DNA of 64,000 nucleotides. It comes from Cyanophora paradoxa CCMP329 (Eukaryota; Plantae; Glaucophyta). Below are positions 8,358 through 64,000 of the stretch, piece after piece. The notes under the pieces were generated by a model. The model saw only the letters and a program-made list of their open reading frames with translations, ran no database searches and had not been told where the DNA came from. The stretch is taken from contig QPMI01000272.1 in NCBI GenBank assembly GCA_004431415.1, forward strand, positions 1-64,000, in the 5' to 3' direction. Position 1 is the first letter of the stretch. Every line of letters starts with the position of its first letter. A program made the position numbers and the translations under genes.

Positions 8358-8395
<38 letters not shown>

Positions 8396-11300
8396 CCGCC
8401 CGCCTCCTCCCCCCGCCCTGCCCCGCCCCACCCGAGCGAGCGCCCTCGCCCGACCGCCGCGCGGCGCAGGTGCACTACGTGAACGACATCGAGCGTGGCG
8501 TCGTCTGGGAGGAGGTGCGCCCGCGCCGCCCTCGCCGCAGCCAGCGTCGTCGACCGGGCGGGCGGGCCTCGCCGGGGCGGGCGGGCAGGTGATCATCATG
8601 CTGCCGCCGCACGTGAACCTCGTCATGCTCTCCGCCACCGTCCCCAACGTCGTCGAGTTCGCCGACTGGATCGGGTCCGCCCCCTTTGCTTCGCCCCGCC
8701 CCGCCCCGCCCCGGCCTCGCTCCCGTGTCGCTCTACGGGGAAACGCTCGGGCGCTGACCGCGGTGCGGGGCAGGCGGACGAAGCGGAAGAAGATCCACGT
8801 GGTGAGCACGCGGGTGCGGCCCGTGCCCCTCGAGCACTTCCTCTCCTACTCCGGCGAGCTCTACAAGGTCCGGGATCCGCAAATTCCACATATCTCCACT
8901 CCTCCTCTTTCCTCTCGTCAAAGCCGACGTCGGAGCAGATCGTGGACTCCAAGGGGACGTACCTCGGCGCCAAGTGCGCGAGAGATCGCCCGCGTCGCCG
9001 CTCGCGCCGCCGCCGACGCCGGGGCGCAGCCATCGGGCGGCGGTGGCGGTGGCGAAGGAGAAGGGCAAGGGGCGGGGGGCGTACGGCGCGCCGGCGGGGG
9101 GCCGGGGCGGGGCGGGGGCCGGGGCGGGGCGGCAGGACAAGACGCAGTGGCGGGGCACGATCGAGATGCTGCGGAAGAAGAGCCTGCTCCCCGTCATCGT
9201 CTTCTCCTTCTCCAAGCGCCGCTGCGAGCAGGCCGCGTGCGCCCGTCCTCGCTCCCTCGTTCAGAGCGCCTCGGAAGGGCGCGGCTGAGGTAAAACGGGG
9301 CGGGGCCAGGGCGGGGCTGGGCGGGCTGGACCTCTCGACGGGGGCGGAGAAGAGCGAGGTGCACGTCTTCGTGGAGAACTCCCTCACCCGCCTCCGCGGT
9401 ACCCCCCGCCCCTCTCGAGGCCAAGCGCCACAGAGGGCTGAAGGGGCGGGGCCAGGGACGGACCGGGAGCTCCCGCAGATCCTCCGCGTCAAGGAGCTCC
9501 TCAAGCGTGCGGGGCTCCCCGGGCCCACCCCCCGGCCCCGCCCCTCACGAGGCAGCCGCACGGCACGGCAGGCGGGATCGGGGTGCACCACGCGGGGCTG
9601 CTGCCGATCGTCAAGGAGGTCGTCGAGATGCTCTTCCAGCGCGGCCTCGTCAAGGCCCGCCCGCTTCCGCCCACGCGCCCCCCACGGCGGCCCCGCCGAG
9701 CCGGCCTCCGGCCCCCCGCCTCCCCCTCTCACCCCGCCCTCGCGACGCAGGTCCTCTTCGCCACCGAGACCTTCGCCATGGGGGCCCGCCCCTCCCCGCC
9801 CCTCCCCGCCCCGCCCCGCCCCGCCCGCTCCGCTTATGTGGAGGCAGGTGAACATGCCGGCGCGGACGGTGGTCTTCAACGGGGTCCGCAAGCACGACGG
9901 CCGCGGCTTCCGCGACCTCCTCCCCGGCGGTCCGCCCCGGCCTCGCCCCCGCCCCACCTCATTCTCGTGCCCTCGCGCCCTCGCCCTTGGCCCCGCCTGA
10001 CGCCGGGGCGGGCAGAGTACGCGCAGATGAGCGGGCGTGCGGGGCGCCGCGGCCTCGACTCGACGGGCGTCGTCGTGCGCGCGTGCCGCCGTCCCTTCCC
10101 CCCCGTCAACCCCGACGGAGGGCCCCTCTGCAGATCATCGCGTGCTGGGACGACTCGGTGCCGGAGGAGCTCTCCACGCAGAAGCTCGTCCTCGGCCAGG
10201 CCACCAAGCTCGAGTCCCAGGTCCCCCGCGCTTCTCCCCCACTCTTCCCGCCCTCGCTCTTCGTCCGACTCCCCGCCCCCCGCATGCAGTTCCGGCTGAC
10301 GTACAACATGATCCTAAACCTACTGCGCGTGGAGGACATGCGCGTCGAGGACATGATCAAGGTCCGCCCCCGCCCGCCCGGGGGGAGATGGAGGAGCCGA
10401 AGCGCGAAGGAAGCTTGGGGCGCCTAATCAACAGCGCTTCTTAGAGCTGCTGGCCCCCCGTCCACCCGTCAAACAACAGCGCGCTCTCTCGCGCTCTGAG
10501 AATAAGGCTGACCGCGGCTCGCCCGCCGGCAGCGCTCCTTCTCGGAGTTCCACCTGCAGCGGGGCTCGGCCGCCCTCTCCGCCGCGCACGCCCGCGGCTC
10601 CGACCGCCTCGCCTCCATCCCCCAGGTCCCAGCCCCCCCCCCTCCCCACGCCGGCCCCCCCCCCCCACCCACCCCCCCCCCCCCCCCCACACCCACCCCC
10701 GGCCCCGGCTCAAACCGGGGGCAGATCGCGTGCGTGGACGCGGCGTGCGCGGGGGAGGCGGAGGCGTACACCGGCGACCTCCTCCGCGCCTCCGCCCTCG
10801 TGCGCCCGCCCGCCCGCTCCCGCCCCGCCTCCTCCCGCCGCGGGCCTGCCAGGGGCCCTCGGCGCTTCCCTGCATTCGGCAGGCGCTCTCCTTCATTTTA
10901 TCACTGATTTCATCGTTCCCCCGGCAGGGGGCGGCGCTGCTGGAGGCGCTGGCCAAGTCGCGCTCGGCGTCGGCCCTCCTCTGCGCTGGCCGCCTCCTCC
11001 TCCTCCACCAGCCCGCCCGCTCCGCCGCCCCCGCCCCCGCCCTCCTCCTCCGCCCCTCCTCCGACGCCGCCGCCAGCGGCGGCTCCGCCTCCGCCTCGTC
11101 CACCCTCTCGCTCCTGTGCATCGTCCTGGCGCCCATGTCGGCCTCCGGCCAGCGGCCCGCCGCCCCGCCCCCGCCCCCCTCCGGGGGCGCCTCCAAGCCC
11201 CTCCCCAAGGGCATCGTGGGCGGCACGGCGTGGGAGGTCGTCGCGGTACCCCTCCGCGACGTCCTCGGCCTCTGCAAGACGAAGCTCAAGGCGAGCGGGG

Positions 11301-44900: not shown

Positions 44901-47211
44901 GGGCGGGCACCATCGCCGTCGACGCCGAGCGCTGGGGCATGCGCGTCGTCGAGGTCGCCCGGGCCCCGGCCTGCTCTCGAGCTCGCCACCGGCCTCGCTG
45001 ATCATCGGATCACGACACTCGGGCAGGTCCGAAGCATCGAGGGCGCAATCGCGGTGCGTGTGCAGATCGAGAGGAGACGCGTGAACCCCGGCCGGCGCCG
45101 GGGCCGGGGCGCGCAGGCGATCGTCTCGCGCGCATGCGCAGGCGGTGCGGGGGGAGGTGGGGGCGGGGCGGGGCGGCGACATCGGGGGCCTCCTCCTCTA
45201 CATGCCCTCCACCGTCCCCAAGGAGAAGACCGGCGACGCGGTGCGCCCGCTCGGGCCCCGCTGCTTTAATTTGATCCGACAGCGAAGAGCCCAATTTCGA
45301 ATTTGCTTGGAGACCCGGGCGTGATCGCGGGCGGGGCGGCGCCGGCCGCGCGCGTTCGCAGGTCGAGCTGCTCTGCGGGGAGCTCGAGCGGGCGAAGGGC
45401 CCCGGGGACCTCGCGCCGGCCCCCTTCATGCCCCTCCGCATCCACGTCCCCCTCGCCCCCTGTGCGCCCCGCCCCGGAGCTCGGGCCGGGCCCCGAGCGT
45501 GCTTTACAGGCTTCGGATTCTAATTTCGCACTAATGTTTAAAAGTTAGAGGTCTGATCATGAGCGGGGCGCAGGGGCGCGGCGGGAGAACGTGTACTCGC
45601 TGCGCCTCCCCATCGCCGAGCAAAACCTCCACGAGTGCGCCCGCCCGCTCCGCTCCGCGCCGCGAAACGCGAAACGCGACCCGATCGCGAGCGGCCGGCG
45701 CAGCTGCCTGGTGCAGGGGTTCCGGGCGCGGCGGGACGCGAGCGTGCCCCGCACCATCCCGACCGCGGCGGCGGGCAGCTGCAGCGAGGCCGAGGTGCGC
45801 GCGCGCGGGGCCGCTCCAGGCAGGCCTAGGGTCGCGATTGAGGGCCGACCGCGGTGCGTGCGCGCGGCTGGGGCCTGCGGGGGCAGATCATGCGGAGGGC
45901 GGACACCCTCGCCCCCGCCTTCGACGAGCTCGAAGAGCCGCTGCGCTCGGCCCTCTCCGGCTCCGCCGAGGCGGCCCCGCAGCCGTGCCTTCCGCGGCCG
46001 GCCCCGCACCCGCAGCCGGCGGACGCCGCCACGCGAGGGGAGCTCGAGCCGGCGGCGGCGGCGGCGGCGCGCGGGGCGCTCCGCATCCTCTTCGCGGAGG
46101 ACACGCCGGCGCGCCTGCCCGCCCTTCCCCTGCAGCCGGCCGCTGGCCCGCCCCCGCCCTCGCCGCGAAGTCACGATCGCGGGGCGCGCAGACGAACGCG
46201 AAGATCGTGATGGTGCAGCTGCGCAAGCTCGGCTACGCGCGCGTGACGCACGCGGGGGACGGGCTCGAGGCGCTGGAGGCGGCGCGCGCCGCCGAGGCCC
46301 GCGGCGAGCCCTTCCACGTCCTCCTCTCCGGTGCCCGCGGCCGAGCTCCAGCGAGCGTTCTCCAATTGCAAGCTTAAATAATATACACCAAGCCCATAGA
46401 TTGAGAGCGATGGCGCAGATCTGATGATGCCGCGGATGGACGGCCTTGAGTCGCTGCGACGGATGCGCGCCGAGCTGCCCCCGGCCTGCCTCCCCTACGC
46501 CGTCGTCATCTCCGGTGACCACTGATTTTCCTGATAAAAAATTCAAGTTTCCTGAGTGTCGCGGGCAGCGAATGTGGGGGCGGCGGACCGCGCCGAGTGC
46601 GCCGACGCCGGATTCGATGCGTTCCTCGCCGTGCGCTTCTCTCCCTCCCTCCCTCCCCCCCCCTCTTCCCCCCTCCCCCCCCTTCCCTCCCCCCCCTTCC
46701 CCCCCCCACTTCCCCGGGGACCCTCCTCCCCTTCTTCCTCCACTCAGCCCCCCAGCCCTCCACGTTACCCCCTTCTCCTCTTCCCCTCTTCCCCGGCTCC
46801 CCCCCCCTCTCCCCCCGCCCCCGCCCCGCCCTCCTCCCGGGACCCCTCCCTCCCTCCCCCCCCCCCCCCCCCCCCCCCCCTCCCGCCCCCTCCCTCGGCC
46901 GCCCGCCGGCGCCGACGCGAGGGCGCGCTGGTGAGCAGAAGCCGGTGCGGGGGTGGGACCTGGAGGGCGCCCTCGGGGTGGCGGCGGAGTGGCTCGCCGC
47001 CCGCGACCGCCGAGAGCCCGCAGCCGGCCACGGCGAGGAGCCGGCGAGCGGCCCCGAGAGGGCCGCAAGCTCGCAGACCGGGGGTACCCATGGCCAGGCG
47101 CGCCGAGCGGCCCCCGCCACGGCCCGCGGCGTCCATCTGGCCTCTGACCGTCGGACCTCGCGATTGCGCATGTGGGGCCGCGGCCTGGGCAGGCGTGCAT
47201 GCAAGAGATGA
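38965..47211 (+). CDS. Hybrid histidine kinase: two GAF-like domains, HisKA, HATPase, pseudo-receiver, receiver
   Basis: GAF-like LEADRAFVL...RAFTVADRDALSAIA and YGADAVEIM...FKPSELVLFEDVCEAVGVALEHA; H-box AKSDFLSVITHEMRTPMQAVIG; N-box NLVGNSTKF; G1 VTDTGAGI; G2 GTGLGL; receiver LRILFAED, DLMMPRMDGLE, GFDAFLAKPV. 5' start and exons at 40.2-41.6 kb are uncertain. Confidence 0.88.
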
Positions 47212-48941: not shown

Positions 48942-49918
48942 CTAGGCGGCCTTGCGCGCGCGGGACTTTGCGGCGACGGCGCCGTAGCCGAGGAGGCCGG
49001 CGACGGGGGAGAGGAGGAGCGGGAGGACCCGCTTGTAGCCGAACGCGTACAGGTACCCTGCGTCGCGCGCGCCCGAACCGAATCAGAATCGGCCGAACGG
49101 ACGAGCTAGAGGGGTCCGGATGGGCCCGAAGGCGGGGGCACCGAGGAAGGGCACGGCGCCGAGCATGTCCTGGTACACGTAGCAGTCCTCCTGCCTCACG
49201 ACCTTTCCTGGGAGCGGGCGGCAGGCCGCGGGGTCAGGGGCAGGCCGCGGGGTCAGGGGCAGGTGGGAACCCAGGCGGGCCAAGACCTTGGTCGTTCAGA
49301 TCGATCTTCAAGATGATACGGACGGGGAAAGAGATGAACGGCAGCCCGCGCATGTAGTACCGCTGCGCATGCAGGACCCGGACACGACAATCAGCGCGGG
49401 TGTGCAAGAGGCCCAGCTGCAGGACGGCCGCAGTGCGGAGTCCTAGGCCTACGCGCCTGCTTCGTGTCGATAAAGAGACGGGCAGGGCTGCCTGGGGGCG
49501 ATCCAGCGACGTGCACGATGTCGACGTCAATGCGGGAGAAGATGCGCGGGAGCATGTAGAACTGGCGGCCCACGCCCGCGCGGCCCGACACTGCGGCGTA
49601 GGATACAGATCAGTGAAGTCGAGCGCATGGCAGCGAGGAGAACTCGTCACCGTTCATCCAAGGATCAGACCACAAGCATGACTCTGAAAGCGATGGAGTG
49701 GGAACGGCGTGAGAGAGGGCGTGATGGAATTGAGCGCGGAGAGGGCCAGACTTTGACGCGCACCATCGTAGTGTTTCTCAAAGACATGGCGCTGCTGGTT
49801 GACGTCGACCGTGTACGCGGCAACGAGGTGCCGGGCCAGCGCAACGAGTCTGCGAAGGAGCGAGCGCGCGGACTCGAGACGCTCGCGGGCGAGCGCATGC
49901 GGATCACGCACGCCTCAT
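48942..49918 (-). CDS. SnoaL/NTF2-like fold protein
   Basis: Spliced reading MRLVALARHLVAAYTVDVNQQRHVFEKHYDESCLWSDPWMNVSGRAGVGRQF...LKIDLNDQGKVVRQEDCY...SRARKAA*; Y-x-x-x-x-x-W-x-DP and GKVVRQED fit NTF2-like patterns. Start codon uncertain. Confidence 0.65.
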
Positions 49919-50200
49919 CGTACGCCATCGTATTGCCTCCGGCCGTCCGATCGCAGCAGCGAGTGGCGCCGAGTGACGGCGAGTGTGCCGGCCGGGGTAC
50001 CGTTGATCGATGCCAAGTTTCGTCTGGCTCTCCTTGTACGCAAGGAGGGCCTCGGCGGCGCTGCCGGGGTGGCTCGCGAGCTCGCCGTTGCGACCTAGAC
50101 TCGCGCAGCTGCGGCCGGCACGAGCGATCGGCTCACGTACGCGATCGCCCGCACGGCTGCCCGCCACGGCTCACGGACGTCACTGCAGCCCTATTCCAAC

Positions 50201-53200
50201 ATGCTCGAGTTTTCCTGGGGTCGAGGACGCGTCTGGTCCGCTTCGCCGCCGATCACGCTGGCTCACGGACGCCAGTCGTGGGCGTCGCTGCAGCGCCTCA
50301 CAGCGGTGCTTCCCCGCGTTGGTCCCGCATCTTTGGCTATTGCAGCTAACGCTGCATTCGCAGCAAGGGTCCGCCCGTCGACCGCGAAGCGAAAACAGGC
50401 AGGAGAATCGACGCCGTCGCCGCCCCTACCTCCTTCGCCCGCGCCCAGGCGCCGCGAGACGAAGCCTGCGGCCAAGGATGCGGCGAAAGCGGTCGCGGGC
50501 ACTTCGCTGAAGTCCGCGGCCGACGTCACGCGGGAGGACTACGCGTGGCTGTGCCGCGAGGTCTGGCGACACAACCGGTTGTACTACGACGAGGCGCGTC
50601 CCGAGATCAGCGACGCCGAGTTTGACAGGCAAGCGGGCGAGGCATCCGCTCGTTCCGCGCCGGAGCCGCCGCTGACGGGCGGCGGCGCAGCCTCCTGCGG
50701 ACGGTGGAGGATGTGGAGGGGCTGCACCCCGAGTGGGTCCTCCCGGACTCGCCGACGCAGCGCGTGGGGGAGCGCCCGACGCCGCGCCCGGGCTTCCGCA
50801 CCGTGCAGCACGAGTCGCCGATGCTCTCGCTCGCCAACACGTACTCCAAGGCGGAGCTGGAGGACTGGCTGGAGAGGCTGCGCAAGGGCCTGAGCGTGCC
50901 GGACGGGGAGCCCGACCCGAGCCTCTGCATCGAGCTGAAGGTGGACGGCGTCGCGATCTCGATCACGTACGAGCGCGGAGTCCTCGCGCGCGCCGTCACC
51001 CGCGGCGACGGTGCGCCCCCCGCGCCGCTCCGCGCTTCGATACGCGCTGAGCGTCCTGCAGGGTCCGTCGGGGACGACGTGACGGAGAACGCGCGGGCGA
51101 TCGCGGGGCTCCCGTGGCGCCTGGAGGGCGACCCGCCGGAGCGCCTGGAGGTCCGGGGCGAGGTCTACATGCCCGTCGCCGCCTTCGAGGCCCAGAACGA
51201 GGCGCGGCGGGCCGAGGGGCGGCCCGAGTGGGCCAACCCGCGCAACGCCGCCGCCGGCTCCCTCAAGCTCCTCGACCCCTCCCTCGTCGCCCCGTGCGCT
51301 CCCGGCCGCCGCCCCGCGTCGCTCCCTTGCGGCCCGCTCACGTGCCCGGTCGGCAGGCGCGGCCTGCGGGCGGTTCTCTACGCGATCGCGGGCGAGTCGG
51401 GGCGGGCGCCGCGGCGGCAGGCGGAGGCGCACGAGGCCATGGCGCGCTGGGGCCTCCCCACCCTCCCCGCCGACCTCACCCTCCCCGACTGCCACTCCCG
51501 GGACGAGGCGCGCCCCTCGCCGCCCCTTGCCGCCCCGCCCGCCGCTCACGCCGGCCGCCCCGCGCAGATGTGGGCGTGGATCGGGCGGGTGGAGGCGCGC
51601 CGCCCCTCGATCCCCTTCCTCATCGACGGCGTCGTTCTCAAGGTCCGCCGGCGCCCACCGCTGCGGGCGGGGGCCCATCGCGTCCCCGCCGACGGGACCG
51701 CCGGCGCAGGTGAACGACTCGGCGAAGCAGTCGGCGCTGGGCTCGACGGCCAAGCACCCGCGCTGGGCCATCGCCTACAAGTTCGCCCCCGCCGTCGCCC
51801 GCGCGCGGTGCGGGGACGCCCCCCTCCCGCAGCGAACGCGGGGCTCACGCCGGCGCGGCAGCGTGCAGGCGATCGTGGTGCAGGTGGGGCGCTCCGGGGT
51901 GCTGACCCCCGTGGCCGAGTTCGATCCGCCGGTGGCGCTCGCCGGCTCGGTGGTGCGGCGGGCCTCGCTGTACAACCTCGCGGAGATCGCCCGCCTGGAC
52001 GTCCGCGTCGGCGACGAGGTCCTCGTCGCCAAGGGCGGCGACGTCATTCCCAAGGTGGGCCCCCTCGAAAAGGAGGAGGAGGGGGACGCGCGCCTCAAGA
52101 GGGGGCCGCAGGTGCTGGAAGTCGTGGAGCAGCCGGGGGAGGCGCGGGGGCCGGCGTGGGAGCCCCCCTCGGAGTGCCCGTCGTGCGGCGGGCCCGTCCG
52201 CGTCGAGGCCCTCTCGCCGGGCAGCGCCCCGACCCTCCGCTGCGTCAGCGCCGTGCGCGCCCTCCCTCGCCTCCCACCGCGGAGCGCCCGCCCGCCCGCC
52301 CGGGCCGCTCACGGCGGGGCGCAGGGCCGGTGCGAGGGCCACCGGCTGCAGCGGCTCGCCTATGCGACGGCCCGCGACGCCCTCGACGTCCACGGCCTCT
52401 CCGCCGTGCGGGCCCCGCGGCCCTCTCCCTCCCTCCGCCTCGCAGCGCTGACCTCGGGGCGCGCAGGGCGTTCTGGCGAAGCTCGTCGAGGCCGGCCTCG
52501 TGGACCGCCTCCCCGACCTCTTCGCCCTCGACCGTGCGCGCCTGCCCCCGAGGGGCGCGCGCTGCCCCGCCTGAGAGCGGAGCAGCGGAGCGGCTGGCCG
52601 GGCTGCGCGGCCTCGGGCCCAAGTCGGCGGGGAAGCTCGCGGCGTCCCTGGAGCGCGCCCGGCGCTCGTGCGACCTCACCCGCCTCCTCATCGCCCTCGG
52701 TGCGGTCCCCGCCCCGATTAGCAGATTGGCGGCTCGGTCTGATGCCGCCGGGGCCCAGGCATCCCGCGCGTCGGGCGGCAGACGGCGGAGGCGCTGGCGG
52801 CGGCGCTCGTGCCCGGGCGGGCGGCGACGGCTCGCGAGGCGGCGCACTCGCTGACCCGGATGAGCCCCGCCGCGCTCACCGAGCTCGCCCTTTCCGTCCC
52901 CGGCATCGGCCCCGTGCGCTCTGCTCTCTCTCCTCCCGCTTGCGCCTCCGCGCCTCGCCCCCCGCCCCCCTCTCACGTGTGTGGGCGCAGCTGACGGCGG
53001 AGGGCCTCGTGACCTTCTTTGGCGCGAAGGAGAACCGCGGCGACCTGCGGGCCCTCCTCGAGGCTGGCTTCCTCTCCGAGGTGCGGGGGGGGGGGGGGGG
53101 TGGGGGGGGAGGGGGGGGGGGGCTAGGGGATACGTGGTTCTTTAGCGTTCATGGGGGCCGTGGCGCGGCCGGCCTCGCTCGGGGCTCGCCCCGAAGCGAC

Positions 53201-53841
53201 AGATGGCCGGGCCAGCGCGGCGCGGGGCGGGTCTTCCGTCCTTCGCCGCGTCCGCGCTAAGCCGCACCGTCCCCTAGAGCCCGATGCACATCATAGTACG
53301 CCGCGCCGCGTCCCATCGGCCGTGCGTCTCCATGGAGCACACATTCCACTTATTCCCTGCCCGTAGCGCAGAGGCCTAGCTAGCCTCGCCGCGCCTCTTA
53401 TCCCCAGGAGTCACAGCGGCGGGCATCTGACGCTGGCCCGGCAGGACACGGCACCCCGGGCGGCCGCGCCAGCCGCGCAGGAGGCGCCGGCGGGGGAGCT
53501 GCCGCTGGCGGGGCTGAAGGTGCTGGTGACGGGCCGCGTGCCCGGCCTGTCGCGGGCCGAGGCCCAGGGGCGGGTGCGCGAGCTGGGCGGGCAGCTCTCC
53601 TCCGGCGCGACTGTCACCCGCGGCGTCTCCCTGCTCGTGAGCGCTCCTCTGTGCGCTCCTCTTGGCTCCGCGTCTCACGCGACGGCGACAGGTGGTGGGC
53701 GAGGGCGCGGGCGCCGCGAAGCTCGAGAAGGCGGCCGAGCTCGGGACGCGCGTCCTCCCCGCTGAGGAGTTCGCCCGTCTTCGGCCCGGCGACAGGCTCC
53801 CCGCTTCCGAGGCCCCGCCGGCGCCCCCGGCCTCCTCCTGA
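50201..53841 (+). CDS. ligA: NAD+-dependent DNA ligase (bacterial LigA type) with about 14 spliceosomal introns and N-terminal leader
   Basis: Domain Ia HNRLYYDEARPEISDAEFD, SPTQRVG, PMLSLANTYS, motif I ELKVDG, TRGDG, EVRGEVYM, WANPRNAAAGSLK, IDGVVLK, PRWAIAYKF, OB-fold VQVGRSGVLTPVA, KGGDVIPKV, Zn finger CPSCG...C...C, HhH GLGPKSA / GIPRVG / GIGP, BRCT VLVTGRV...GAAKLEKAAELG; stop TGA 53839-53841. Confidence 0.96.
53153..53345. repeat. 193-bp direct repeat, copy 1 (inside a ligA intron)
   Basis: Matches 54037-54229 with 3 substitutions by manual comparison. Confidence 0.9.
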
Positions 53842-54036
53842 GGCCGCTGTACCATCACGCCCTTTCTCCTTTCTTGAACTTCGCGCGCTTTCTCGCATTG
53901 CTTTTTCGGATGTCTTGCTACACGCCCCTTGTACTTTACTATATGCATATGCAGAACTGTCTCCAAGGATTGCGCCATGCTTTTCTTTAGACGCCCGCCA
54001 GACTTCGACATTGAGCTCTTTCATTTGATCTTTTTG

Positions 54037-54229
54037 GGGGGCCGTGGCGCGGCCGGCCTCGCGCGGGGCTCGCCCCGAAGCGACAGATGGCCGGGCCAGC
54101 GCGGCGCGGGGCGGGTCTTCCGTCCTTCGCCGCGTCCGCGCTAAGCCGCACTGTCCCCTAGAGCCTGATGCACATCATAGTACGCCGCGCCGCGTCCCAT
54201 CGGCCGTGCGTCTCCATGGAGCACACATT
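54037..54229. repeat. 193-bp direct repeat, copy 2 (downstream of ligA stop)
   Basis: Matches 53153-53345 with 3 substitutions. Confidence 0.9.
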
Positions 54230-54433
54230 TCCCTTCCCGAACTCACCCCTCGTAGAGCGTTATTCTTCCCCTGCCCCCGGAGGCCTAGCTATAGGCCCAG
54301 CTGGGAGAGCACAGGCACCGCCGCCGGACTCGTGGGGGCCCACGTGCACTGGGGGGGCGCTACACAGCGATCGGTAAAAGGGCAAACCGCTCCATCCCCC
54401 CTGGGGGGCAAGCCCGCGGTACATAATTCGGCC

Positions 54434-55315
54434 ATGGCGTTCGCAGCGCCCTGCTTCGCGGCGCGTCCGCAGGCGACGCCCAGCGTCCGGCAAGCGTCTA
54501 GCTCGCAGCTGCGCAGCCAGGAGCCCGAGCGGAGCCTGCTCAGCTCCCGTCAAAGCGGGCTCTTTGGCGCGAACCTGCGGCGGTTCGAGTCGAATGACAG
54601 CATCTCGTGGCATGCGGATGTCACTTGTATGGCCAAGCCGGCGCCGTCCTCCACTCCATCCACGTCGGCACCGGCTGCGGGGGTCCCCCCCGTGCCTCTC
54701 ATCGGCGCCGGCATTGCTATCGCTGCCGCTGCATTCTACGCGTACAAGAACTGGCCCGAGAGTGAGCACGTCCCCCATTTCCGCGCAGGCGATGCTCTAG
54801 AGCTTTCCCGGCGACGCTCACCAACCGCAGTCCAGGAGAAGATCAAGAAGGGCGAGCTCTTCAAGGCGGCCCCTCCTCCGGGCTCTGTCGATGAGGACGA
54901 CGACGGCGAGCCGAAGAAGGGCCCCGTGCTCTACAACTACGAGTGCACCAAGTGTGGCATGGTCATCTTCCCGGCGCCCCACGCGAAGATCTGGACCAAG
55001 GTCCGGGCGATCCCTGGAGATCCTTACCGTCCCCCGAGTGCATAGCTGACTGGCGTCCGATCCAGTTCATGGACGAAAAGACCGGCGAGCTCCGCGAGGA
55101 CTTCAAATGCACGAACCCGAAGTGCGGTGCGGGGCGTGAGTCTTTCGTGAAGAAGATACCGAAGAAGGTGCGCGCGCCTTTCCTCTTCCTCTTCCGGCGC
55201 TCACTTGCTGCTGCAGTTCGATCCGTCGCGCCCGCCGCCGCCGCCGCAACCCCGCGAGGCGCCCGCGGCTCCCCCGGCCGCCCCGACCACCGACGCTTCC
55301 GGCGAGTCTGCATAG
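54434..55315 (+). CDS. Rubredoxin-like protein with transit-peptide-like leader and one transmembrane helix
   Basis: Leader MAFAAPCFAARPQATPSVRQASSS...; TM PLIGAGIAIAAAAFYAY; YECTKCGMVIFP ... DFKCTNPKCGAGRESF; three introns; stop TAG 55313-55315. Confidence 0.82.
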
Positions 55316-61800: not shown

Positions 61801-64000
61801 GTGGAGCTGCGGCGCCACCTCGCCCTCGGCCTCTCCTGGGACCTCGTCTACCGCGCCGAGAACGCCCTCGGTCCGCCCCGCCCCCCGCCCCCCGCCCCCC
61901 GCGCCTATCCGACTCTCTCTCTTTATATCCGACCTCCGCGGCCCCGCAGCGATCAGCGGAGCGGCGATGGACCCGCACGAGGTAGGCCCCCGCACCCCTC
62001 GCCGGCCCCCCGCCGCCCCCTCCTCACTCCCGCGCCCCTCTCTCGCAGGTTTGGGTGCGCGGCCTCGAGCCGGATCGGCTCTCGCGTGCCCCGCGCCCGT
62101 AACCCTCCGCTTTCGCCGCAGTCGATCGTGACGTCGCTCCACCGGCGGGCCCCGTTCCTCGCCGGTCCGCACCCCGCGCCTCGGGCCGGGACCCGGGGCC
62201 CGCCTCACGCGCCCGCACGCAGGCTTCCCGGGGTACTCGCACGTGCCGCCGGGCGTGCCGACGCCGCGGGAAGCCCTCGGGAGCCGCGCGGCCGCCCCCG
62301 TCGCGGGCCCCGGCGCCCCGGAGCGGGAGCGGGACTCGCCGCCGCGGGCGCGCCCCTCCAAGTCCGTTGGCATCAACTCCCGCCTGGACCTCGGCCCCGA
62401 GGCGCGGGGCGGCGGCGGTGGCGGCTCCGCTGCCGCGCCCCCCTCCTCCTCCCTGAACCTCGCCGGCGCCGGGCGGGCCGCGGGGGCGCCCTCGAAGCCG
62501 CGCTCGACGCTGGGGGTGGGGGGCGGGGCGGCGGGGCGGCGTGCTGCGGCCGACCTGCGCCCCGCCTACGCCGACGAGCCGGGCCTCCTCCGCCTCGCCA
62601 GCCTCCAGTACCCCGTGCGCGTCCTCCCGCTCCCCCCCCCCCCCATGTACCCCGGCCAGGCTCCGACGCCCCCGGGGGCACGGGCAGTGGATCGGGGCGG
62701 ACGCGCGGGCGCTCTCGGGGGCGCTGGCGGAGGACCTGCCGCTCGCCCTCCTCGACCTCTCTGGCAACCCCGCCCTATCCCGCGAGCACGTGCGCACCCC
62801 GCCCCCCCACCCGCCCCGAGCCCCGACCGTTTGCCCGGCCGCCGGCCCCGCGCGCCGCTCTGACGCGGGGGGCGGCCAGCTTCGGGAGATCTTTTCGTCG
62901 CTGCGGGAGAACCGGACGCTGCGGACGCTCTGCGTGGCGGGGACGCGCCCCGGGGAGGCGGCCGTCGCGGAGCTCGCGTCGGCCCTCGCGGAGAACGGGA
63001 CGCTGACGGAGCTCGACCTCTCCGACTGCGGCCTGCGCGGGGAGGCGGCGGCGGCGCTGGCGCGGCCGCTGGAGAGCCGCTACTGCGCCCTCCGCTCCCT
63101 CCGCCTCTCCCGCTGCGCCATCGCCGACGACGGGTCCGCCCGGGCCCCCACCGGAGAGGCGCCTCTCGCGCTGGGCTCTGAGGGGGCGCGGGGGCAGGTG
63201 CGCGGCGCTGGCGGGGGTGCTGCCGCGGGCGGCGCGCCTCACGGCGCTGGACGTGTCGGCGAACGGGATCACGCACCGGACGGCGGTGGCCCTCTTCAAG
63301 GCCCTCGGCGAGAACGCGACCCTCAAGCACCTCGCCCTCGCCGCCAACCCCATCGGCGTCCGCCCCGCCCCGCCCCGCACGCCCCGCGCGGCGCGGCCGG
63401 CCGACTCGGGGCGGGGCAGGACGAGCCGCTCTCGTACCTGGCGGCGAGCCTGCGGCAGAACGGGACGCTCACGGGGCTCGTCTTCGGGAGCCAGTCCGCC
63501 GGCCACGCCGGCATCGGCTGCACCTCCGAGGCGCGGCCCCCTCCCCCCCCCCCCCCCCCCCCCCCGCCCCCTCCCCGCCCCCGCCGAGGCCTGGGGCGCG
63601 GGCGCAGGGGGCGTCGGCGATCGCGGAGGCGCTGGAGCAGAACCGCGCCCTCACCTCCCTCGACCTCGACAGCAACGGGGTGGACGACCGGGGGGCGGCC
63701 GCCTTCGTCCGCGTCCTCCGCTGGAACCGCTCCATCATTCACCTCGACCTCACCGTCCGCCCCGCGCCCCGTCCCCCGCCCCGCCTCCTCGCCCCATGCC
63801 CGGCGCAGGAGAACCGGTGCGGGGAGGAGGCGCTGGCGGCCGTCCGAGACGCCCTCCGCCTCAACCGCGAGTCCGCCCCGCTCCCGCCCCTCTCCAATCC
63901 GCTTCGGGCCCTAACGGGGCCCCCCAGGTACTTCTGGCGGCGGGACGCGCAGCGCGGGGCCGCCGGGGCGGTCCCCTCCGCGAGCCTCGCCTCCGTGCGG
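55884..64000 (+). CDS. Large STAND-type NTPase: DUF4062-like domain, NACHT/AAA-like domain, RNI-type LRRs (3' truncated by window)
   Basis: TVRVCVSCTTQDTHGERQCL, CRPFFVGIVTQRWG, FTALEQVYG, AFVFLR (TEP1/NWD-like N-terminal domain); FFGRGDAL; Walker A LLAGEAGIGKT (about 59556-59578); Walker B LLIVLDG; PLYLRLL; LRRs NGTLTELDLSDCGL, LTALDVSANGI, LTSLDLDSNGVDDRGA. Whether 55.9-58 kb belongs to the same gene is inferred. Confidence 0.78.

What the first reader, a model, noticed from the sequence alone, without database searches (positions are those of the whole stretch)
50201..53841. Intron-containing, nucleus-encoded NAD+-dependent DNA ligase with a leader peptide: candidate organellar ligase
Seen: a complete LigA (Ia, KxDG adenylation core, OB, Zn finger, HhH, BRCT) interrupted by about 14 introns of the same style as neighbouring host genes, so it is not bacterial contamination, plus a roughly 105-aa Ser/Ala/Arg-rich, acid-poor N-terminal extension. 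Established: eukaryotes normally use ATP-dependent ligases; NAD+-dependent ligases are typical of bacteria, some archaea and some viruses. Inference: this alga may use a bacterial-type ligase for plastid or mitochondrial DNA replication/repair.
Basis: partly seen in the sequence, partly recalled or inferred. Interest (0 to 1): 0.85.

Follow-up and report, generated by a model that had tools for sequence, protein, structure and literature searches.

The report
Cyanophora's chlamydial-type NAD+ DNA ligase gene
This is a real, expressed, 16-intron nuclear gene of the glaucophyte alga Cyanophora paradoxa for a complete bacterial-type (NAD+-dependent) DNA ligase with an import-style leader. The gene and its chlamydial ancestry were already published in 2019, so what this work adds is a corrected start and leader.

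Summary
The LigA gene is real.

The true start is ATG 50010, with an in-frame TGA six bases upstream. That gives 17 exons and 855 aa, with 139 aa ahead of domain Ia.

The new N-terminus, MPSFVWLSLY, has the Phe-within-10-residues mark of Cyanophora muroplast transit peptides. It has no acidic residue before position 64 and no second in-frame Met.

All LigA domains and catalytic residues are present. NCBIfam LigA equivalog models score above their cut-offs.

The gene is tig00001155_g7324 of Cyanophora paradoxa. Price et al. 2019, Table S8, lists it as a manually validated chlamydial gene-transfer candidate shared with red algae. My trees agree: it pairs with another eukaryotic protein, and that pair joins Chlamydiota with 100% SH-aLRT support.

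Organelle targeting, most likely to the muroplast, is still an inference. I found no localisation or activity data.

Two other first-reader notes of this scan cover this same stretch; none covers other DNA.

Verdict: already known, modest interest.

The parts
50001..53964 (+). Minimum extent of the mRNA as seen in spliced transcript contigs
   Evidence: contigs of 2621-2699 nt (X1, X2) and partial ones (X6) begin at 50001-50009 and end at 53893-53964.
50004..50006 (+). In-frame TGA just upstream of the start codon
   Evidence: It lies inside contigs X2 and X6.
50010..50136 (+). CDS exon 1, from start ATG 50010. N-terminus MPSFVWLSLY..., with Phe4.
   Evidence: First start codon after a stop in this frame.
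50189..50305 (+). CDS exon 2 (leader).
   Evidence: joints 50136>50189 and 50305>50364.
50364..50628 (+). CDS exon 3: Pro/Ala/Lys-rich end of the leader, then domain Ia (50537-50626)
   Evidence: Aligned to E. coli LigA residues 16-36.
50691..51010 (+). CDS exon 4: adenylation domain, motif I K-V-D-G at 50938-50949, TRGD at 50998-51009. It follows a GC-AG intron.
51062..51293 (+). CDS exon 5: adenylation domain, RGEV (51154-51165) and NPRNAAAGSLK (51235-51267)
51357..51507 (+). CDS exon 6: adenylation domain. It is followed by a GC-AG intron.
51568..51642 (+). CDS exon 7: motif IDGVVLK (51625-51642)
51710..51807 (+). CDS exon 8: end of the adenylation domain, PRWAIAYKF (motif V Lys)
51862..52054 (+). 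CDS exon 9: OB fold
   Evidence: (OB 2.6e-25).
52112..52252 (+). CDS exon 10: Zn finger Cys 1-3 (CPSC at 52175-52186; RC at 52238-)
52325..52405 (+). CDS exon 11: fourth Zn-finger Cys (GRCEG) and start of HhH
52467..52533 (+). CDS exon 12: HhH
52586..52699 (+). CDS exon 13: HhH (GLGPKSA)
52759..52913 (+). CDS exon 14: HhH (GIGP), with a 12-residue insert relative to E. coli
52991..53080 (+). CDS exon 15: end of HhH
53081..53444 (+). The one long intron (364 nt). It starts with a G-run and holds a 199-nt repeat (53153-53351).
   Evidence: The contig record numbering leaves no letters between 53080 and 53445.
53445..53636 (+). CDS exon 16: linker and BRCT
   Evidence: BRCT 26.2 bits, cut-off 21.3.
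53692..53841 (+). CDS exon 17: end of BRCT, Pro/Ala tail, stop TGA at 53839-53841

Best explanation
This is the nuclear gene tig00001155_g7324 of the glaucophyte Cyanophora paradoxa.

Shown:
- It is transcribed, and 16 short introns are spliced out. Fourteen are GT-AG and two are GC-AG.
- It is translated from ATG 50010 into an 855-aa protein.
- Residues from about 140 onward are a full-length LigA with every catalytic residue in place.
- Its ancestry is chlamydial: it arose by an old gene transfer that at least one other eukaryote shares. Its codon usage now matches the host.

Inferred:
- The first 139 residues act as an N-terminal import signal followed by a Pro/Ala-rich linker.
- The protein enters a DNA-containing organelle, most likely the muroplast (cyanelle). 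Phe4-Val5 is the mark that its Toc75/Omp85-type import recognises.
- There it adenylates its motif I lysine (the KVDG lysine, E. coli K115 equivalent) from NAD+ and seals nicks during plastid DNA replication and repair, as LigA does in bacteria.
For: - Spliced contigs from three runs in two studies carry all 16 joints, while the DNA run is unspliced.
- The ORF is open from 50010 to 53841, with a TGA at 50004.
- NCBIfam LigA equivalogs score above their cut-offs. Pfam finds the adenylation, OB, HHH_2, HHH_5 and BRCT domains.
- E. coli LigA (2OWO) aligns over residues 16-668 at 2.5e-129. Conserved are K115, D117, G118, R136, E173, R200, D285, K290, K314 and the four Zn cysteines.
- P0001, the EukProt protein tig00001155_g7324.t1, is 100% identical over the matched stretches.
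- Price et al. 2019, Table S8, lists that id as a chlamydial LigA, 'Gl + Rh (98%)', manually validated.
- All five named proteins among the top 120 hits are Chlamydiota.
- Trees under LG+G4 (117 rows) and under LG+C20 PMSF (56 rows) both pair it with a eukaryotic protein (98-99) and join that pair to Chlamydiota at 100 SH-aLRT.
- Leader: Phe4, no acidic residue before position 64, 18 Arg against 6 Asp+Glu, and no second Met, so only one isoform is possible.
- Cyanelle transit peptides carry Phe in the first 10 residues and are enriched in Val. Adding Phe makes foreign transit peptides work (PMC4510345).
- The eukaryotic sister protein P0270 also has a leader of about 107 aa, with Phe6.
- GC3 is 0.93.
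Against: - No localisation, import or enzyme data exist for this protein.
- A 262-protein cyanelle proteome lists no DNA ligase, but it lists no DNA polymerase or gyrase either, so it is uninformative.
- At 139 aa the leader is about twice the median cyanelle transit peptide of 63 aa.
- Phe near the N-terminus is not exclusive to cyanelle proteins. In PMC4510345, 13 of 53 non-cyanelle proteins with start positions in the 21-40 and 51-80 bins had it (the authors read these bins as mitochondrial plus still-unknown cyanelle proteins).
- Arg-rich, acid-poor leaders also fit mitochondria. Paulinella has both mitochondrial- and chromatophore-targeted LigA copies.
- The red alga C. merolae serves both organelles with ATP-dependent LIG1 alone.
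- Three residues differ from E. coli: R208 is K, Y35 is F and H23 is Y. K at R208 and Y at H23 are seen in all three chlamydial relatives read (P0002, P0004, P0020); F at Y35 in two of them (P0020 keeps Y).
- My trees hold no cyanobacterial LigA.
Confidence: 0.55

Rival explanations
1. The same active LigA is imported into the mitochondrion, or into both organelles through an ambiguous presequence, and seals nicks in mitochondrial DNA.
For: - The leader is Arg-rich and has no acidic residue for 63 residues, which suits mitochondrial presequences too.
- Paulinella has nuclear LigA copies predicted to carry mitochondrial targeting peptides.
- Organellar ligases are often dual targeted, as with LIG1 in C. 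merolae.
Against: - Phe4-Val5 is the specific hallmark of cyanelle transit peptides.
- No mitochondrial predictor or proteome was available, so this rival was not really tested.
Confidence: 0.27
2. The protein stays in the nucleus or cytosol as an extra repair ligase. The N-terminal extension is a disordered linker with basic, NLS-like patches (KRK, RRR) rather than an import signal.
For: - The second half of the extension is Pro/Ala/Lys-rich with short basic clusters.
- Its length exceeds that of typical transit peptides.
Against: - The hydrophobic Phe-containing start and the long acid-free stretch look like a transit peptide.
- There is no internal Met to make a leaderless form.
- The eukaryotic sister protein keeps a long leader that also contains Phe.
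- Cyanophora also has ATP-dependent ligase genes: the supplement of PMC6704402 lists ligase 3-like and ligase 4 hits.
Confidence: 0.08
3. The gene is an artefact: bacterial contamination, or a decaying transferred pseudogene.
For: The nearest relatives are bacterial, at about 44% identity.
Against: - Sixteen spliceosomal introns are removed in transcripts from two studies.
- The 855-codon ORF is open and every catalytic residue is kept.
- GC3 of 0.93 matches the host.
- The gene sits in a 64-kb window with other intron-bearing genes.
Confidence: 0.01

Closest known systems
tig00001155_g7324.t1 (P0001), the published Cyanophora paradoxa model. Price et al. 2019, DNA Res 26:287, Suppl. Table S8: 'DNA ligase (NAD(+)) LigA', chlamydial HGT, Gl + Rh 98%.
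   Same: It is the same locus. It is identical across the LigA domains and has the same proposed origin.
   Different: - The published 810-aa model has a different leader. It shares only MPSFVWLS and then uses splice sites the transcripts do not show.
- It also carries a 6-residue micro-exon (SPMHII) taken from the long intron.
- The RNA contigs support an 855-aa product.
- The paper does not discuss localisation or function.
LigA of Chlamydiota (Waddliaceae, Chlamydiia; for example P0020, P0037, P0064, and the unnamed P0002 and P0004)
   Same: - Nearest bacterial relatives, at 40-44% identity over the read-through adenylation query and 44-45% over the whole protein.
- Same domain order.
- Shared K at E. 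coli R208 and, in two of the three read, F at Y35.
- One clade at 100 SH-aLRT.
   Different: The bacterial proteins are 663-668 aa with no leader and no introns. The Cyanophora gene is far more GC-rich.
E. coli LigA (PDB 2OWO), the reference NAD+-dependent ligase
   Same: All six modules align, and the catalytic and Zn-binding residues are conserved.
   Different: - A 139-aa N-terminal extension.
- R208K, Y35F and H23Y.
- A longer Zn-finger loop (C-x2-C-x18-C-x5-C against x14).
- A 12-residue insert in HhH and a longer linker before BRCT.
Nuclear-encoded LigA of Paulinella micropora/chromatophora, with chromatophore (crTP) or mitochondrial targeting peptides (PMC9450145)
   Same: A bacterial-type NAD+ ligase encoded in a eukaryotic nucleus and predicted to serve the DNA of an endosymbiont-derived organelle.
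   Different: It comes from a separate endosymbiosis and uses different targeting signals. That paper assigns those genes a 'eukaryotic' phylogenetic position. I did not compare the sequences.
Organellar ATP-dependent DNA ligase 1 (C. merolae CMK235C, Arabidopsis LIG1)
   Same: It does the job proposed here, sealing nicks in plastid and/or mitochondrial DNA.
   Different: It is an unrelated cofactor class (ATP) of eukaryotic origin. Its localisation was shown by GFP, whereas none has been shown for the Cyanophora LigA.

Membership tests
NAD+-dependent DNA ligase LigA | Whole-protein match to curated equivalog models | tested here: met
   NF005932 scores 630 bits (cut-off 369) and TIGR00575 scores 596.8 (cut-off 444.45), covering model positions 2-662 and 2-651 (on P0001).
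NAD+-dependent DNA ligase LigA | Adenylation domain with the motif I lysine (KxDG) and motifs III, IV and V | tested here: met
   Pfam PF01653 at 2e-76. K-V-D-G, TRGDG, RGEV, DGVVLK and AYKF align to E. coli K115, R136, E173, K290 and K314.
NAD+-dependent DNA ligase LigA | N-terminal domain Ia carrying the NMN-binding residues (E. coli Y22, H23, D32, Y35, D36; the residue list is from my own knowledge of the Shuman laboratory's mutagenesis) | tested here: inconclusive
   It aligns from E. coli residue 16. Y22, D32 and D36 are kept, H23 is Y and Y35 is F; of the chlamydial LigAs read, all three have Y at H23 and two have F at Y35. Pfam Nlig-Ia reaches only 18.8 bits against a cut-off of 27.
NAD+-dependent DNA ligase LigA | OB fold, four-Cys zinc finger, HhH array and C-terminal BRCT | tested here: met
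   OB 2.2e-26, HHH_2 9e-9, HHH_5 8e-8, BRCT 26.2 bits (cut-off 21.3). The four cysteines align to E. coli C408, C411, C426 and C432. The Pfam zinc-finger model itself does not hit.
NAD+-dependent DNA ligase LigA | Nick sealing that needs NAD+ and not ATP | not testable with these tools
   Needs recombinant protein.
Cyanophora muroplast (cyanelle) stromal transit peptide | Phe within the first 10 residues, hydrophobic N-terminal module enriched in Val | tested here: met
   MPSFVWLSLY has Phe4 and Val5. The criterion is from PMC4510345.
Cyanophora muroplast (cyanelle) stromal transit peptide | Ser/Ala-rich, acid-poor, length about 11-110 residues (median 63) | tested here: inconclusive
   The composition fits: 27 Ala, 15 Ser, 18 Arg, and the first acidic residue at position 64. 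But 139 residues precede domain Ia, so a transit peptide plus a linker must be assumed.
Cyanophora muroplast (cyanelle) stromal transit peptide | Import into muroplasts and cleavage | not testable with these tools
   The published cyanelle proteome lists no ligase, polymerase or gyrase.
Chlamydia-derived gene of Archaeplastida | A well-supported clade with Chlamydiota that excludes other bacteria | tested here: met
   100 SH-aLRT in both trees. Published support is 98%.
Chlamydia-derived gene of Archaeplastida | Not closer to cyanobacteria (plastid donor) or alphaproteobacteria (mitochondrial donor) | tested here: inconclusive
   One Rhizobiales row falls far away, and alphaproteobacterial plasmid copies are 34-36% identical. 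None of the five named proteins among the 120 best hits is cyanobacterial. But I could not obtain a named cyanobacterial LigA for the trees.

The most novel reading that the evidence does not exclude
The muroplast, the most cyanobacterium-like of all plastids, seals its replication nicks with a ligase that is neither the cyanobacterial nor the host enzyme. Instead it uses a chlamydial LigA kept since before glaucophytes and red algae split. In that case plastid DNA maintenance would be a further function supplied by the proposed chlamydial third partner, and organelle DNA replication would be tied to the plastid NAD+ pool.
Probability: 0.4. Interest if true: 0.45.

Novelty: already known. Interest (0 to 1): 0.3.

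Why it matters
The identity of the plastid DNA ligase is still unsettled in plants: the Arabidopsis plastid ligase "remains unclear" (PMC4166229). In the one red alga tested, the ligase is ATP-dependent LIG1.

A LigA shown to sit in the Cyanophora muroplast would give a second solution to that problem. It would also add DNA maintenance to the mostly metabolic list of chlamydia-derived functions in Archaeplastida.

In practice, the corrected start matters.

Tried and rejected
rejected. The spliced mRNA puts it out of frame.
- **SPMHII micro-exon and the leader splice pattern of the published model P0001:** not seen in any spliced contig.
- **Joined protein:** I sent no joined (spliced) protein of my own to any search or fold tool. 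Searches used single exons, stop-free in-frame read-through references (window:50692-51642, window:51710-52405, window:50626-52851 with a region) and the database protein P0001. In scripts, exons were translated one by one. Only the three leader pieces were concatenated, to count residues, and the whole CDS, to compute GC.
- **Cyanobacterial comparators:** Two tblastn searches of plasmids gave none either. The cyanobacterial alternative is therefore excluded only indirectly.
- **Bad rows in the first tree:** L006 and L030 were mistranslated long branches, because the longest ORF lay in the wrong frame of GC-rich DNA. I left them out of the second tree.
- **'Careful' tree:** the search did not finish in time. 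The support values reported come from quick searches.
- **Cyanelle proteome supplements:** they list no replication proteins at all.
- **Literature searches for a characterised plastid LigA in algae:** nothing found.
- **Pfam on the leader exons and on flanking ORFs:** nothing found.
- **ESM Atlas:** generic LigA clusters only, one of them with Chlorophyta as the commonest known phylum.
Full report
**What is in the sequence**

Translating the three forward frames of 50100-53950 shows LigA-like segments that hop between frames. From the DNA I derived 15 exons and 14 introns. All phases fit and there is no stop up to TGA 53839-53841.

- Thirteen of those introns are 51-77 nt long and one is 364 nt.
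- The commonest donor is GTGCGC or GTGCGG; a few differ (GTCCGC, GTGGGC, GTGAGC). Two introns are GC-AG (donors at 50629 and 51508).
- Pfam on single-exon and stop-free read-through references gives the NAD-ligase adenylation domain (8e-49) and the OB fold (2.6e-25).

**Transcript evidence, and the correction it forces**

Public runs of the same organism hold about half of the locus's words. That is what a spliced mRNA would give.

When laid on 49700-54100, contigs of 2621 and 2699 nt from runs X1 and X2, and partial contigs from X6, reproduce all 14 of my joints. These runs come from two studies. The DNA run X10 is colinear with the genome. Once the tool's stated positional ambiguity is allowed for, the two odd-looking joints resolve to GC..AG.

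The same contigs also skip 50137-50188 (52 nt) and 50306-50363 (58 nt). The second skip shifts the frame.

- From ATG 50010 it stays open through all 17 exons: 2568 nt, 855 aa, no internal stop.
- A TGA lies six bases upstream of ATG 50010, inside two of the contigs.

The gene therefore has 16 introns (median 59.5 nt) and starts outside the coordinates given. Exon GC is 0.75 and GC3 is 0.93.

**The leader**

139 residues precede the first domain Ia helix.

- It begins MPSFVWLSLY.
- It has no acidic residue before position 64.
- It holds 18 Arg, 27 Ala, 15 Ser and 17 Pro, against 6 Asp+Glu.
- It contains no second Met, so no leaderless isoform can be made from this mRNA.
- Its second half is Pro/Ala/Lys-rich.

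**The enzyme**

The database protein P0001 is the same gene. It is 100% identical over the matched stretches; the 82% figure against my read-through query simply reflects the intron-derived residues in that query.

- P0001 passes both general LigA equivalog models of NCBIfam.
- It carries the Pfam adenylation, OB, HHH_2, HHH_5 and BRCT domains.
- It aligns with E. coli LigA (2OWO) over residues 16-668 at 2.5e-129.
- Conserved in that alignment are K115/D117/G118, R136, E173, R200, D285, K290, K314 and the four zinc cysteines.
- Three residues differ: R208 is Lys, Y35 is Phe and H23 is Tyr. Lys at R208 and Tyr at H23 occur in all three chlamydial relatives I read, and Phe at Y35 in two of them, so these are family traits rather than decay.

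That these residues are the catalytic ones is established knowledge of LigA enzymology, recalled from memory and not tested here.

**Whose gene it is**

P0001 is the EukProt entry tig00001155_g7324.t1. The 2019 paper on the improved Cyanophora paradoxa assembly uses these ids. It reports 67.6% genome GC and many short introns, with a mean of 9.2 per gene and a mean length of 86 bp.

Its Supplementary Table S8 lists exactly this id as 'DNA ligase (NAD(+)) LigA', distribution 'Gl + Rh (98%)', manually validated. It is one of 35 well-supported chlamydial transfer candidates.

Other follow-up agents of this scan also name Cyanophora for this genome. Two other first-reader notes cover this very stretch and call it chlamydia-like.

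**My own test of the origin**

After P0001, the best 119 hits are proteins of about 640-700 aa (plus two shorter fragments) at 39-44% identity. All five that carry a name are Chlamydiota.

I built two trees.

- **Tree 1** had 117 rows: these hits, representatives from the exhaustive search, and 80 named genomes from more than 20 phyla. It used LG+G4.
- **Tree 2** had 56 rows and used LG+C20 PMSF.

In both trees Cyanophora pairs with P0270 (SH-aLRT 99 and 98). The pair then joins all named Chlamydiota and the top hits at 100, apart from Bacteroidota, the Planctomycetota-Verrucomicrobiota rows, Pseudomonadota and the rest.

P0270 is eukaryotic by two signs. Its 90%-identity cluster holds an MMETSP transcript. 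It also lies on contigs next to a GNT-I glycosyltransferase gene. It too has a leader of about 107 aa, with Phe6.

Limits of this test:
- Both are quick searches.
- The Cyanophora row has a deviant amino-acid composition.
- No named cyanobacterial LigA was available.

**How it most likely works**

Shown:
- The gene is expressed and spliced.
- The reading frame is intact.
- LigA membership holds by sequence.
- The ancestry is chlamydial.

Inferred:
- The product is imported into an organelle.

The case for the muroplast rests on published work on cyanelle transit peptides. In that work Phe lies within the first 10 residues, Val is enriched in the N-terminal region, the peptides are rich in Ser or Ala, and adding Phe makes green-lineage transit peptides work in Cyanophora (PMC4510345).

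Against this:
- The leader is twice the median length.
- Phe is not exclusive to cyanelle proteins.
- Paulinella has LigA copies predicted for mitochondria as well as for its chromatophore.
- C. merolae uses LIG1 in both organelles.

I put the muroplast at roughly one half, mitochondrial or dual targeting at about a quarter, and the remainder on the other readings, chiefly a nuclear or cytosolic role.

**Novelty**

The gene, its annotation and its chlamydial origin are published. A nuclear-encoded LigA predicted for an endosymbiont-derived organelle is also on record, in Paulinella.

What I add is the RNA-supported gene model. I found no study of the protein's location or activity.

**A procedural note**

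P0001 served as the full-length stand-in.

Noticed in passing
window 53153-53351 and 54037-54235: A 199-nt direct repeat, 97% identical. One copy lies inside the only long intron of the LigA gene. The other lies about 70 nt past the end of its transcript, ahead of the next gene. There are only these two copies in the window. A separate 235-nt contig at depth 5.6 in run X1 covers 53180-53414, so this piece may be transcribed or retained at a low level.
   Followed up: partly
window 50629-50690 and 51508-51567: Two of the 16 introns use GC-AG splice sites (GCAAGC and GCGCGC donors). Both are confirmed by transcript joints.
   Followed up: yes
window 53081-53125: The long intron opens with a run of about 40 G (GTGCGGGGGG...). 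Similar G- or C-runs occur near 8360-8418, 10628-10696, 46799-46897 and 63537-63584. Read laying skipped 53075-53130 as repeat.
   Followed up: no
window 50626-52851 (frame 2) and 51083-53257 (frame 3), + strand: Stop-free frames of 742 and 725 codons run straight through exons and introns, because the DNA is so GC-rich and several introns have lengths divisible by three. In this genome, ORF length alone says little about what is coding.
   Followed up: partly
P0270; L081 11-2221: The eukaryotic sister LigA (736 aa, in a cluster with an MMETSP transcript) has a leader of about 107 aa with Phe6. It shows no BRCT domain in Pfam, unlike the Cyanophora protein. Its organism was not identified.
   Followed up: partly
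window 54044-55045, + strand: The downstream ORF of 333 aa is probably part of the next gene (g7325), which an older model had fused to the ligase gene. It has no Pfam match.
   Followed up: partly
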